The notes under the pieces are model-generated. The model was not told the origin of the DNA and did no database searches. It saw only the letters and a program-made list of their open reading frames with translations. A stretch of 64,000 nucleotides of DNA from Pocillopora damicornis (taxonomy: Eukaryota): positions 62,001 to 126,000 of the forward strand of contig NW_020847620.1 in NCBI RefSeq assembly GCF_003704095.1, read 5' to 3'. Positions 36,988 to 39,900 of this stretch are shown piece by piece (within the stretch, counting starts at the first letter, position 1; every line of letters begins with the position of its first letter). The position numbers were made by a program, and so were the translations under genes.

Positions 36988-39900
36988 TCAGTTGTTTTCG
37001 TCTGAATTGTGAGGACAAATAATACCTCCCTTCAGGTCATCAAAGTTGATGTGACCCCAACGACGATCCCTCTCATCAACTAGTCTGACTTGGGCGTATT
37101 GACCAATGAATTCTTTTACGTCCCAGCTCTTACGGTACATTGTCTCGCTACAACTGCCTGTTTCTTTTCTGACAACCTATATGTAACAGCAAACATATCA
37201 AACAGTTTTAAACCTTTGTTTTGATGAATGCCGACATATTTATAATGATTATTTCAAATAAGGAGCAGACGCTTTTTTAATGAAACAATATATTACGGCA
37301 TTAAATGTGCTGATTGCTCTGCACCTAAGAAAAAAAAACATTTGTTTCAACGTTGTATAAGCCAAAGACAACTAAAATGCGCCAGACGCGAGGTTGGTTC
37401 CCTCTTGGAACCTCTCTCGAGGAAACTCAAAATGAGCCATCGAAAAGGCAAAAATATATTTAAAAAGTAAAAACCAAACGTTTTCGGCACTAGCTATAGA
37501 TCGTTTTTAGGTTCACTATCATTTACTCTGATGATGACCAAGAGTCGAAAACATTTGGCTTTTTTTTTTAAATATGTTTTTTCCTTGTAAATAGCTTATT
37601 GTAAAAATAAACGAATCTCATGGATATCACGAACCTCAAAATAGTTTCGCAATTTTGAAAGACCAAATATCTGATACGTTTATAAATCTACCTAGGTTGT
37701 TTCAAAAGAATCAAAGGAAACATAATGGTCAAAGTGATAATCTCACCTGGTTGTCGACAATAAGCTCCGCACGGATATCACTTATGGTACATCCTCCACC
37801 GATGAGAAACGAGATATCTCTGCCAGCGATACGGAAACAAGGAGAAATTAGAGTTCCCTGGGGTAGATCGGCACCACCTGGGTGCAAGTGTCCTGCTGGA
37901 TCGCTCTCGCTGGGTCGTTTCTCTATCCCCCCTATCCACCAGTCCCCTTGCTGATTGGCGCTATCTCTATTGCGTGCCACTGGATTGTCACCAAATGTTG
38001 GCTGGTAAATGAAAGCTGTGCCTGTCATTTCCCATGCGCCGATTCCATCTTCAAAGTCAAAGCTGCAAGCTAGTGAGAAAGAAAAAAGAGGAAATTTTTA
38101 TCCCGCAGAATACTCTATGACTATCATTCGATATCATAAATTCCCCTTTACAGTTCTGTATCTACCTTTATTGCAGTGTGCGCCAGTGAACCCTGAAGGA
38201 CATTTGCAGCGAAACCCTTTATCAGTGTATCCAGCTTGACACGTGCCATTGTTTGAACATGGATTGCTGCTGCAGGGATTCTGTTTAAAGACAAAATGGA
38301 TTATCCCTTATTTTGTTATCATCCTTGGACTTTCGAGATTCTTAAAGAGTCAAATCATACCAATACCAAGCATATGCCTTCCAATCATCGTACCCGATAG
38401 AAAACCGTTATAATCCTTTTCTCCTAATCCCTTGCGCGAGTAATTTCAGATGGGAATTACTGGATAATTTGTTGTTAATGCTGATGTTTGGAGCGTTAGT
38501 CTTTCGTAAAAGCATTGCAAATGTGTGAATTTTTTGCCCTTTGCTCTCACGATGTACTTACGCTACAACCGTCAGCTCTAGAGGGAAATTTATCTTGTAT
38601 TACCAGGCCTCCTCCTCCACCGACACAGCACCACAGTTTATTGAGAAACTTACTCACTTTAAAAGAAGGAAACAGCTGACTATCGGAAACAGCTGAAATC
38701 GCCCATCTTACCTCAATAGCGAGATAAATGTGACCATTTTTACTTTGTGGAACAAGCGGGCTTTGGTCTCCCTCCGAAGAATGATCCTGATTCAATTCGC
38801 AGGTGAAGTTTCCTCCCACCTTGGGTCCAAAGTTCATGGACACACAGCTAGGTTCCATATGACACATTTCATTACAGCTCCCCTGATGTGAAACCTCTTC
38901 AGTTCTGATGACATTGCCCTCTATGACTTTGTTGTGTATTGGTGTTTGGAAAATAATGGTGCGACATTCGTCATCTGTTTAAGCATTGAATATCTGGTTT
39001 ATATTCACAGTTGAATATATGTCACTTGTCAAGGGGAAGGTCGTCCTAGATAGAACTATATCCCAAGCCTCGAGCACCAGAGGGCACAACTTTTCTCTTT
39101 AAGAATCGATCTTGGTAGATAACGTTTTTATTTTGTCTAATTGTAGGTGTTTTTTTTTTGTTCGTTGCGTGGAGATGTTTTGTAGAGACGTAAATGTAGT
39201 GATATTTCGTCAGACTATTGTCTTCTATAAACAGTTAAAATCGTTCTATTAATATGAATATGATCTGACGCAGATCTAGTAATATTTTGTCATCTGACAA
39301 TAATTTAGAAAATGTAAGATAAGGAAATTAATTCTAAGACAAAAGAAAACTTAAAAAGCATTTCTACCCACTTATCAGCAAGCATCTTCGCCATTTGCCA
39401 AATATAGCGAAATCAAGAATTTTTCCCCTTCAAATTCTCTATGTTTACGTCAAAAATTGATTTTACTTTAAGTCCCTCGTACTTCCTATTCTAATCCATT
39501 ATCTTCTTTTTTTCCAAAGAAGTAAGTAACCATTTGGTGGCATTTGAAGCACATTTTTGATGCTTTAGAATCAATTTACCTGAACAAAACCCTCCAGCTC
39601 TCGTGACTCCTTCTTTGCAGGTGCAGCCATAAGAGTGATCAGTCTTTATGCACCTCGCATTTACACCACATACTTTGCTGTCATTAGTGCACCGGTTAAT
39701 ATCTTCAAAGGAAAGTTGTCAGGTCAGGAAACATTTATCGCCAGGGAGGAGGTGGGGGGTAAGTGGGGGTGTGGGATCATTNNNNNNNNNNNNNNNNNNN
39801 NNNNNNNNNNNNNNNNNNNNNNNNNNNNNNNNNNNNNNNNNNNNNNNNNNNNNNNNNNNNNNNNNNNNNNNNNNNNNNNNNTACCGTCCACCTTTTACTG

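What the first reader, a model, noticed from the sequence alone, without database searches (positions are those of the whole stretch)
36988..38069. Bacterial-type CBM38/GH32-associated-like module as the C-terminal domain of an animal PAN-EGF secreted protein
Seen: a ~170-aa two-exon domain DFEDG..W..TGTAF...GTLISPCF.I....ISFLIGGG......L.VD.QVVR..TG..SETM....WDV.EFIGQ.AQVRLVD....WGHINFDD. From recall, this motif series (DFE..W, GTL.S..F, FL..GG, ATG...E.M....WD......G.....I.D...GGWGHINVD) typifies beta-sandwich modules on bacterial levanases/inulinases (GH32) and related glycosidases, including CAZy CBM38 (inulin-binding). Here it carries a spliceosomal intron, has extra Cys residues, and is fused to animal PAN and EGF exons, so it is not contamination. 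Inference: an anciently transferred or patchily retained module now used as a secreted lectin, possibly for microbial fructans or other exopolysaccharides.
Basis: partly seen in the sequence, partly recalled or inferred. Interest (0 to 1): 0.75.

Follow-up and report, generated by a model that had tools for sequence, protein, structure and literature searches.

The report
Bacterial-type sugar-binding module in coral
A secreted coral protein built from ordinary animal PAN and EGF domains ends in a beta-sandwich module whose nearest relatives are bacterial proteins, most likely a gene piece taken from bacteria long ago and since multiplied in corals and sea anemones as a probable sugar-recognising domain.

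Summary
On the minus strand, exons 38069-37747 and 37176-36988 encode one ~165-aa domain. RNA contigs from several studies splice out the 570-base intron and join the domain to EGF, PAN, EGF-CA, PAN and signal-peptide exons.

The domain matches no Pfam or NCBIfam model and no solved-structure sequence. An AlphaFold model of an intronless paralogue is a confident beta jelly roll resembling CBM6/35/61, MAM and reelin folds.

It belongs to a very large, mostly bacterial superfamily: 5179 cluster representatives. GH32 levanase-linked modules are real but distant cousins, 30-42% identical. Papers label modules in that position CBM38.

The nearest relatives, 52-63% identical, are small secreted proteins of Desulfobacterota and other bacteria. 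They share a signature loop and a cysteine pair that the GH32-linked modules lack.

Every named eukaryotic member is a stony coral or sea anemone. They form one clade placed inside the bacterial group, though an AU test does not reject the alternative.

Verdict: probable ancient bacterial-to-hexacoral transfer, then exon shuffling and expansion to about 20 copies here. Lectin function is inferred; fructan specificity is unsupported.

The parts
41550..41609 (-). Exon 1: start codon and a 20-residue hydrophobic signal-peptide-like leader
   Evidence: The 30 loose-end letters of RNA contigs beyond 40751 match the window exactly at 41550-41579. Translated. Signal peptide judged by eye only; no predictor was run.
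40497..40751 (-). Exon 2: PAN/Apple domain
   Evidence: Pfam PAN_1 E 2e-5 on the enclosing open frame. RNA joint 40011 to 40497 in X1, X5 and X10. Translated.
39933..40011 (-). Exon 3: short exon with weak EGF-like similarity, bordering the assembly gap 39782-39881
   Evidence: RNA joints 39703 to 39927/39933. One contig holds 152 letters there that the window lacks. tblastn with Stylophora protein P0278 gives 45% identity over 29 aa. The gap was not filled.
39580..39703 (-). Exon 4: EGF-like domain of the calcium-binding type
   Evidence: Pfam EGF_3 3.7e-5 and EGF_CA 7.8e-4, both below the curated cut-offs. RNA joint 38974 to 39580 in all 4 runs laid.
38712..38974 (-). Exon 5: second PAN/Apple domain
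   Evidence: Pfam PAN_1 E 9.4e-7. RNA joint 38280 to 38712 in X1, X5 and X12.
38166..38280 (-). Exon 6: EGF domain, ending in phase 1
   Evidence: Pfam EGF E 1.3e-10. RNA joint 38069 to 38166 in X1, X5 and X12.
37747..38069 (-). It carries the N-terminal Cys, DFEDG, the signature loop [11 protein letters not shown]...[17 protein letters not shown] and FLIGGGC.
   Evidence: 33 of 34 subfamily positions kept. No Pfam or NCBIfam match at E up to 10.
37177..37746 (-). Phase-0 GT-AG intron inside the module
   Evidence: RNA joint in X1 and X5. The same position is split in paralogues L002, L005 and L008-L010 and is absent in L011/L012.
36988..37176 (-). The 3' UTR runs on to at least 36503.
   Evidence: 7 of 7 and 14 of 14 conserved positions kept. 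RNA contigs cover 36503-36963.

Best explanation
The finding is the C-terminal module of an expressed, spliced, secreted mosaic protein of an anthozoan, probably a stony coral. The domain order is signal peptide, PAN, short exon, EGF-CA-like, PAN, EGF, module.

The module is a ~160-residue beta jelly roll from a very large, mainly bacterial superfamily. That superfamily has no Pfam model and no solved structure. It has two relevant branches:
(a) Modules inserted between blades IV and V of GH32 fructanases or strung beside them. Two papers' passages label modules in such positions CBM38.
(b) A highly conserved branch with the loop QPT[YF]GDNP.AR...WWIG..E.RP and an internal Cys pair (GGGC...TG.C). 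It occurs as small secreted proteins or fused to PKD, PASTA and other envelope domains in Desulfobacterota, Alphaproteobacteria, Poribacteria and others.

The coral module belongs to branch (b).

Most likely history (inferred): one transfer from a bacterium into an ancestor of sea anemones and stony corals. Afterwards the domain gained a terminal disulfide clamp, a phase-1 entry boundary and, in most copies, a phase-0 intron. It was shuffled onto PAN, EGF, F5/8C, ShK, fibrinogen, CUB and collagen-C domains, and expanded into tandem clusters of about 20 copies in this genome.

Most likely function (inferred from fold and relatives, not shown): a calcium-stabilised glycan-binding (lectin-like) head held out by PAN/EGF spacers, recognising a microbial or matrix polysaccharide. 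The ligand is unknown and is probably not fructan.

The confidence given is for the whole statement. By part I give about 0.9 to homology and gene structure, about 0.7 to a single bacterial-to-hexacoral transfer, and about 0.45 to lectin function.
For: - Gene structure and expression: splice joints in polyA RNA contigs of runs from several studies, and the leader exon.
- Domain partners: Pfam PAN and EGF on the exons.
- No known family: no Pfam or NCBIfam match exon by exon, nor Pfam on the intronless paralogue. No PDB sequence match with the single sequence or the profile.
- Fold: AlphaFold pLDDT 88.5, pTM 0.86. Foldseek best hits are gingipain adhesin, MAM and CBM35/6/61 at TM 0.4-0.56. VIA-align Z is 11.3-9 for CBM-type modules, reelin and MAM.
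- Size of superfamily: 5179 representatives at E<=1e-3, 795 at <=1e-30.
- Partner domains in 85 representatives: PKD 15, PASTA 14, F5/8C 5, GH32N 3.
- GH32 link: with per-module scores of 20-96 bits against 190-280 for branch (b).
- Bacterial homes: 60 loci, including an isolate genome with ordinary bacterial neighbours.
- Identity: 52/55% to P0066 against 30-33/38-42% to GH32 protein P0252.
- Signature loop and Cys pair are shared by cnidarian and branch (b) bacterial copies and absent from GH32-linked copies.
- Terminal Cys pair is present in 10 of 10 copies scanned in named cnidarian proteins. Of 37 bacterial copies, none has the N-terminal Cys and 1 has the C-terminal one.
- Trees: a 103-row clade (support 92) in a 346-row FastTree holds all named cnidarian rows and none of the 67 bacterial rows so labelled (64 from named loci, 3 named proteins). 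In the careful 109-row tree a 28-row clade (99/98) sits inside Desulfobacterota-type rows.
- Named eukaryotes are all Hexacorallia.
- Own genome: 21 exon matches.
Against: - The AU test does not reject a tree with all 74 branch (b) bacterial rows together (p-AU 0.313, lnL difference 13.2). Nesting inside that branch is therefore not statistically secured, and the root is assumed.
- Only a minority of hits carry organism names, only the best 120 or 150 hits per search were visible, and saw only proteins of 93-296 aa. Other eukaryotic holders cannot be excluded. A fungal GH32 with the distant module type was seen.
I labelled them from their cysteine pattern and partner domains.
- No binding data exist for branch (b). 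Fold matches are generic (best Z 11, 9-18% identity) and include non-lectin domains such as MAM and reelin.
- The CBM38 identity of branch (a) was not tested with a CAZy model. A search meant to reach the published Pseudoalteromonas enzyme did not list it among the best 120.
- The model was made on a paralogue about 54% identical to the window copy, not on the window protein itself.
Confidence: 0.6

Rival explanations
1. One reading: the module is a CBM38-type fructan (inulin/levan) binding module, and the coral protein is a secreted lectin for microbial fructans.
For: - Homology to GH32-linked modules is real.
- Passages in two papers place CBM38 between blades IV and V of a GH32 and in tandem beside a GH32. 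These are the same architectures as P0195/P0208/P0219 and P0252.
- NCBI names one Nematostella family member 'putative glycosyl hydrolase ecdE'.
Against: - GH32-linked copies are the distant branch: 30-42% identity and 20-96 bits, against 52-63% and 190-280 bits for non-GH32 bacterial proteins.
- The near-invariant loop of the coral branch is missing from GH32-linked copies, which are about 12 residues shorter there.
- Partners of the close branch are PKD, PASTA and envelope lipoprotein domains, not fructanases.
- No GH32 domain is present in the coral gene.
Confidence: 0.12
2. Vertical inheritance: the module is ancient in eukaryotes or animals and was lost almost everywhere except hexacorals (patchy retention).
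For: - The AU test does not force the cnidarian clade inside the bacterial branch.
- Many hits are unnamed, so other eukaryotes might hold it.
Against: - Identity of 52-63% to particular bacterial proteins is higher than expected for a domain separated since the bacterial-eukaryote split, and exceeds the identity between the two bacterial branches.
- The internal Cys pair and the signature loop are shared with one bacterial branch only.
- All named eukaryotic holders are Hexacorallia.
- Intronless copies exist in this genome.
Confidence: 0.1
3. The module is not a glycan binder. It may be a protein-protein adhesion or oligomerisation domain (as MAM, reelin subrepeats or the gingipain cleaved-adhesin domains are), or an enzyme with a conserved acidic/His site.
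For: - MAM, reelin and cleaved-adhesin domains rank among the top fold matches with the CBMs.
- Very high conservation, including E, D, R, H and N positions, could mark a catalytic or metal site.
Against: - Most top structural matches are carbohydrate-binding modules.
- The superfamily is attached to glycoside hydrolases GH32 and GH116.
- The conserved FE near the N terminus and D..H.N.D at the C terminus fit the structural calcium site of this fold class. That point comes from my own knowledge and was not tested.
Confidence: 0.2
4. Artefact: bacterial contamination of the assembly, or cnidarian DNA contaminating the bacterial bins.
For: None beyond the unusual cross-kingdom identity.
Against: - GT-AG splicing in polyA RNA and fusion to PAN/EGF exons.
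- 21 copies lie on several contigs of this genome.
- Bacterial copies sit among bacterial genes in an isolate genome and on a 4.7-Mb contig.
Confidence: 0.01

Closest known systems
CAZy family CBM38: modules of GH32 fructan-active enzymes. The founding inulin-binding module of Paenibacillus macerans fructanotransferase is recalled, not seen here.
   Same: - Same superfamily as the modules that sit in GH32 enzymes at the positions where papers annotate CBM38.
- Shared core motifs.
- About 150-160 residues, all-beta.
   Different: - The coral module has no GH32 partner.
- It is only 30-42% identical to GH32-linked copies.
- It carries an extra near-invariant loop and disulfides.
- A direct match to the CAZy model was not testable here.
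Unnamed bacterial secreted proteins of about 219 aa (examples: P0043, P0066, P0084; Trichlorobacter thiogenes locus L042) and their PKD- or PASTA-fused relatives
   Same: - 52-63% identity over the whole module.
- Same signature loop and same internal Cys pair.
   Different: - The bacterial proteins have a short N-terminal beta-hairpin-like leader or PKD/PASTA partners.
- They almost entirely lack the terminal Cys pair (0 of 37 copies with the N-terminal Cys, 1 of 37 with the C-terminal one) and have no introns.
- The coral copies have a terminal Cys clamp and animal partner domains.
Beta-jelly-roll binding modules of the CBM6/35/61/16 and MAM/reelin type
   Same: Same general fold by Foldseek (E 1e-5 to 1e-3) and VIA-align (Z 9-11).
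   Different: - 9-18% identity.
- No Pfam match to any of these families at E up to 10.
- The shared fold does not show a shared ligand.
Stylophora pistillata 'Apple domain-containing protein' and 'EGF-like domain-containing protein' (cluster of P0179, with P0278-P0280)
   Same: Same PAN plus EGF plus module make-up, at 71-73% identity over the module exons.
   Different: A different species. The public models appear to merge neighbouring genes. No function is assigned.

Membership tests
CAZy CBM38 | Significant match to the family's own model or to its founding inulin-binding module | not testable with these tools
   No dbCAN/CAZy model or founding sequence was available. The Pfam and NCBIfam copies hold no model for it, and the module region of GH32 protein P0252 is also unmatched in Pfam.
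CAZy CBM38 | Attached to or inserted in a GH32 catalytic domain | tested here: not met
   The coral gene's other exons are PAN and EGF and RNA contigs join them. No GH32 is present. The feature is met only by distant bacterial and fungal cousins.
CAZy CBM38 | Binds beta-2,1-fructan (inulin) | not testable with these tools
   Needs a binding assay.
Superfamily of GH32-linked and standalone 'DFE...FLIGGG...WGHIN.D' modules (no Pfam name) | Conserved core positions shared by cnidarian, close bacterial and GH32-linked copies | tested here: met
   The window exons keep 23 of 25 and 14 of 14 such positions. Profile hits to GH32 proteins reach E 1e-57 to 1e-63.
Signature-loop subfamily (QPT[YF]GDNP.AR...WWIG..E.RP, GGGC...TG.C) | Signature loop and internal Cys pair; over 50% identity to bacterial members | tested here: met
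   33 of 34 and 7 of 7 positions conserved at 95% or more are kept. Identity to P0066 is 52% and 55%.
MAM domain (Pfam PF00629; accession recalled) | Match to the Pfam model | tested here: not met
   No Pfam family at E up to 10 for either exon or for the whole-domain paralogues. Only fold-level likeness was found, Z about 9-10.
F5/8 type C (discoidin) and CBM6/CBM35 | Match to the Pfam models | tested here: not met
   No match at E up to 10. F5/8C occurs only as a separate partner domain in some family members.
Pfam DUF4980 (PF16352) and BT_3657-like_N (PF22847), GH32-associated Bacteroides domains | Match to the Pfam models | tested here: not met
   No match in the whole genome for either model, at E<=0.001 for PF16352 and at E<=1 for PF22847, and none in the domain scans. 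The only hint was an Atlas feature score of 0.92 to a DUF4980-bearing cluster.

The most novel reading that the evidence does not exclude
Hexacorals captured a bacterial envelope-glycan-binding module and turned it into a large family of secreted pattern-recognition lectins. The near-invariant signature loop would be a new type of glycan-binding site. It would recognise in microbes the same conserved ligand that the bacterial proteins bind in their own envelope, so the family would help corals sense or sort their bacteria, including during disease exposure.
Probability: 0.2. Interest if true: 0.8.

Novelty: new variant of a known kind. Interest (0 to 1): 0.55.

Why it matters
The result gives corals and sea anemones a sizeable, previously uninterpreted family of secreted proteins whose working end is of bacterial type. 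There are about 20 copies in this genome.

If the module binds a microbial or matrix glycan, it is a candidate recognition receptor in coral-microbe interactions. One coral disease study reports that a gene annotated 'glycosyl hydrolase ecdE' rose in disease-exposed corals (passages seen). I could not check whether that gene belongs to this family.

The result also points to a very large bacterial domain family with no Pfam model and no solved structure: over 5000 clusters at 50% identity. Its best-conserved branch has no known ligand.

Finally, it is a clean case of how a transferred domain becomes an animal mobile module. The steps are an added disulfide clamp, a phase-1 exon boundary, intron gain, and shuffling with EGF and PAN.

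Tried and rejected
- Pfam and NCBIfam on each exon, and Pfam on the whole-domain paralogues, found nothing at E up to 10.
- PDB sequence searches with one sequence and with the profile gave only chance-level rows.
- The Atlas pointed weakly to DUF4980. That model and PF22847 (BT_3657-like_N) have no match in the genome, and neither appeared among the Pfam matches of the domain. I dropped this lead.
- I tried to reach the published CBM38-bearing Pseudoalteromonas GH32 by searching with the insertion of a Marinobacter GH32. The best 120 rows named no Pseudoalteromonas, so the CBM38 label stays indirect. That search did show a Penicillium GH32 with the distant module type.
- The neighbourhood of the bacterial gene in Trichlorobacter thiogenes holds chemotaxis, histidine-kinase-like, IHF-like, MerR-like and aconitase-like open frames. 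I named these by eye, and they gave no functional hint.
- The eLife coral comparative-genomics paper with transfer candidates holds none of the terms glycosyl hydrolase, levanase, carbohydrate-binding, lectin or Deltaproteobacteria.
- No paper in the library holds both CBM38 and coral in a relevant sense. These searches cover only that library.
- Supplements are closed. Data files of PMC9524840 and supplementary figures of the Pseudoalteromonas preprint might identify the genes meant.
- Contamination was considered and rejected.
- The AU test meant to secure nesting within bacteria came back non-significant, and I report it as such.
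Full report
WHAT IS THERE

The gene lies on the minus strand. The first enters in phase 1 after an AG and ends on a codon boundary before GTGAGA. The second begins after TAG and ends in TGA.

I laid four polyA or random-primed RNA runs from four studies on 36500-41200. These are contigs, so they show presence and joints but not expression level. 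Joints with CT..AC ends on the plus strand (GT..AG for a minus-strand gene) are:
- 37174/6 to 37745/7 in X1 and X5
- 38069 to 38166 in X1, X5 and X12
- 38280 to 38712 in X1, X5 and X12
- 38974 to 39580 in all four runs
- 39703 to 39927/39933 in X1 and X5, across the assembly gap. One contig holds 152 letters there that the window lacks. I did not read or fill them.
- 40011 to 40497 in X1, X5 and X10

One 1063-letter contig (X5) links five of these exons.

The contigs run on beyond 40751. Their 30 loose letters match the window exactly at 41550-41579. There an ATG opens a 20-residue hydrophobic leader. I take it for a signal peptide by eye only.

Pfam finds PAN_1 on the exons at 40751-40497 and 38974-38712. 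It finds EGF on 38280-38166 and weaker EGF-type matches on 39703-39580. So the protein reads: leader, PAN, short exon, EGF-CA-like, PAN, EGF, module.

Some non-canonical joints (for example 37146 to 37746 with about 29 other letters between) look like contigs of paralogues laid partly on this copy.

THE MODULE IS IN NO CURATED LIBRARY USED HERE

Neither exon matches any Pfam-A or NCBIfam model at E up to 10.

The spliced protein was never built, searched or folded. The same genome has 21 matches to the first exon on ten contigs, two of them with in-frame stops. In two of the 21 (L011 and L012 on contig C2686) the whole module is one open frame without the intron. I used that natural contiguous sequence for whole-domain work. 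It is 53-55% identical to the window's first exon and 51% to its second exon.

It also has no Pfam match. It has no real match among PDB sequences, either alone or as a 40-sequence profile.

FOLD

AlphaFold2 with alignment A1 gives mean pLDDT 88.5 and pTM 0.86, with nine strands.

Foldseek against the PDB gives 38 matches at E<=0.001. The best are the K1 and K3 cleaved-adhesin domains of gingipain, the neuropilin MAM domain, and CBM35, CBM6 and CBM61, at TM 0.4-0.56 and 8-16% identity.

VIA-align over 48,161 chains gives these top scores:
- Z 11.3 for a C-terminal module of a Paenibacillus glucosyltransferase
- Z 11.2 for a porphyran-binding module
- Z 10.9 for CBM61
- Z 10.7-10.2 for reelin repeats
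- Z about 10 for MAM domains

This is a generic beta jelly roll of the carbohydrate-binding-module and MAM class. No single family stands out.

RELATIVES

A word-indexed search with the L011 domain found 704 proteins at E<=0.001 among 767 candidates; the best 120 were listed.
- 11 rows name an anthozoan: Actinostola, Oculina, Stylophora, Orbicella, Desmophyllum and three Porites species.
- 3 rows name a bacterium: two Deltaproteobacteria bins and one Syntrophales bin. They are about 219 aa and 59-61% identical.

A profile search of 1.84 billion cluster representatives found 5179 at E<=1e-3, 3425 at <=1e-10 and 795 at <=1e-30.

I scanned 85 of the best 150 representatives with Pfam, taking all those of 280-900 aa. 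The commonest partner domains were PKD (15), PASTA (14), F5/8C (5), GH32 N-terminal (3), caspase (3) and CsgG/LpoB/TolB_N-type (3 each).

Seven GH32-bearing hits were confirmed.
- In P0195, P0208 and P0219, and in Streptomyces levanases, module copies interrupt the GH32 propeller at about profile position 239 of 307.
- In P0252 and P0159 they stand in tandem before the GH32 domain.

[quoted passage not shown] A passage of a 2020 paper gives CBM38 x3 + GH32 + CBM38 for a Defluviitalea protein. The architectures agree, so the GH32-linked branch is probably what CAZy calls CBM38. I could not test this with the CAZy model.

Searches with the module region of two GH32 proteins returned 3552 and 1734 hits among 8000 scored candidates each. 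These were mostly actinobacterial levanases, but also GH116 proteins, HZS_alpha proteins and one Penicillium GH32.

TWO BRANCHES

With a 160-position model, GH32-linked copies score 20-96 bits and often match only the second half. The other branch scores 190-280 bits over the full length.

The window exons are 52% and 55% identical to Syntrophales protein P0066. They are 30-33% and 38-42% identical to the modules of GH32 protein P0252.

Column statistics over 15 copies from named cnidarians or this genome, 37 close bacterial copies and 44 GH32-linked copies show a shared core: DFE.G, W, G.AF, GD, G..TS..F, FLIGGG, TG...E, W.V, G..A, D, WGH.N.D. The loop QPTYGDNPTAR.RGQ ... WWIG..E.RP ... QGD and the pair GGGC/TG.C belong only to the cnidarian and close bacterial copies. 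GH32-linked copies are about 12 residues shorter there.

The window copy keeps 40 of 41 subfamily positions and 37 of 39 superfamily positions, so it looks intact.

WHERE THE CLOSE BRANCH LIVES

A pattern scan of one genome per bacterial and archaeal species gave 60 confirmed loci.
- Most are Desulfobacterota: Syntrophaceae, Smithellaceae, Desulfobacteraceae and Geobacteraceae, including the isolate Trichlorobacter thiogenes.
- Others are two Alphaproteobacteria bins (up to 63% identity), SAR324, Nitrospinota, and Poribacteria with three or four tandem genes.
- More distant hits lie in other phyla.

The scan used the signature loop as its pattern, so it is blind to the GH32 branch. The T. thiogenes gene sits among ordinary bacterial open frames.

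Further name look-ups added Exaiptasia, Nematostella (one isoform named 'putative glycosyl hydrolase ecdE'; another protein named as a CUB and EGF protein), Actinia, Actinostola and Stylophora 'Apple domain' proteins. Every named eukaryote of the close branch is a sea anemone or stony coral.

TREES

A FastTree of 346 full-length module copies, rooted on a GH32-linked copy, has a 103-row clade with support 92. It contains every row from a named cnidarian and the two own-genome rows. It contains none of the 67 rows I had labelled bacterial (64 from named bacterial loci, 3 named bacterial proteins). Its sister is a 103-row clade dominated by Desulfobacterota.

A careful IQ-TREE of 109 rows gives a 28-row clade (99/98). 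It holds the 13 rows from named cnidarians and the 2 own-genome rows, plus 13 unnamed rows, 8 of which I had labelled cnidarian myself. That clade lies inside successive bacterial groupings with supports 88/87, 93/85, 100/89 and 99/96.

Against this, an AU test of the tree that keeps all 74 close-branch bacterial rows together gives p 0.313. The data therefore do not reject a cnidarian clade standing beside, rather than inside, that bacterial branch. I also named the group after seeing the tree.

Even so, the cnidarian clade would lie between two bacterial branches unless the root is on its own stem.

DOMESTICATION MARKS

- A cysteine just before FDFE and another shortly after FDD are present in 10 of 10 copies scanned in named cnidarian proteins, in L011 and L012, and in the window copy. 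Of 37 bacterial copies, none has the first and one has the second.
- The module's first exon starts in phase 1, like the EGF exon before it.
- Most copies in this genome carry the same phase-0 intron, while L011 and L012 have none.
- Partner domains differ among cnidarian members: PAN, EGF, F5/8C, ShK, fibrinogen C, CUB, fibrillar collagen C.

HOW IT MOST LIKELY WORKS

Shown:
- The protein is expressed and spliced and has a leader.
- The module is an intact member of a conserved jelly-roll family.
- Distant members of that family ride on glycoside hydrolases.

Inferred:
- The module is a glycan-binding head.
- The FE near its start and the D..H.N.D at its end form the structural calcium site usual in this fold class (my own knowledge, untested).
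- The signature loop is the binding site.

The loop is absent from GH32-linked modules, and the close bacterial relatives travel with PKD, PASTA and envelope domains. I therefore think fructan is an unlikely ligand, and a bacterial surface or matrix polysaccharide is more likely.

I give about 0.9 to the homology statements, about 0.7 to a single bacterial-to-hexacoral transfer, and about 0.45 to lectin function.

A coral disease study reports a gene annotated 'glycosyl hydrolase ecdE' rising in disease-exposed corals (three passages read).

NOVELTY

Automatic annotation has brushed against the similarity with the 'ecdE' name. In the library searched I found no paper that treats this cnidarian family, its bacterial origin or its signature loop. 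I file it as a new variant of a known kind: a divergent, animal-borne branch of a carbohydrate-binding-module superfamily.

Noticed in passing
window 25775-27238 (minus strand): A second, tandem copy of the gene's 3' part. It has a PAN exon (27184-26918), an EGF exon (26187-26065) and the module's last exon (25960-25775, 76% identical). The module's first exon is missing, since only about 100 bases separate the EGF exon from the last exon. It may be a truncated gene or a pseudogene.
   Followed up: partly
window 36167-36277 (minus strand): A decayed copy of the module's last exon with two in-frame stops, just downstream of the intact gene's 3' UTR.
   Followed up: no
window 31773-32639 and 24132-25028 (minus strand): Two paralogous open frames with a VWA7 N-terminal domain (Pfam PF25107, E 1e-44 for the first). 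One follows each copy of the PAN-EGF-module unit, so the whole unit of about 10 kb seems tandemly duplicated.
   Followed up: partly
G000 contigs C1362 (351-364 kb), C3440 (12-35 kb), C2686 (10-19 kb), C905 (550-557 kb): The family sits in tandem clusters of two to six copies. The C2686 copies (L011, L012) lack the intron, and one neighbour there has an in-frame TAG.
   Followed up: partly
L049, L050, L053, L054 (Candidatus Poribacteria bins): Sponge-associated Poribacteria carry two to four tandem genes of the close branch per locus.
   Followed up: no
bacterial proteins P0043, P0066, P0084, P0060 and L042 5698-6468: The standalone bacterial proteins share a conserved stretch of about 30 residues between the signal peptide and the module, of the form V.FLK.G..V.VPVN..DI..ISFE. 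Its role is unknown.
   Followed up: no
window 39782-39881: The assembly gap lies inside the gene. One RNA contig has 152 letters between the flanking exons that the window lacks, so an exon or part of one is hidden there. It was not read or filled.
   Followed up: no
P0289, P0287: The distant module type also rides on GH116 glucosylceramidase-like proteins and on proteins with a hydrazine-synthase-alpha-like middle domain and cytochrome c motifs. It is therefore not specific to GH32.
   Followed up: no
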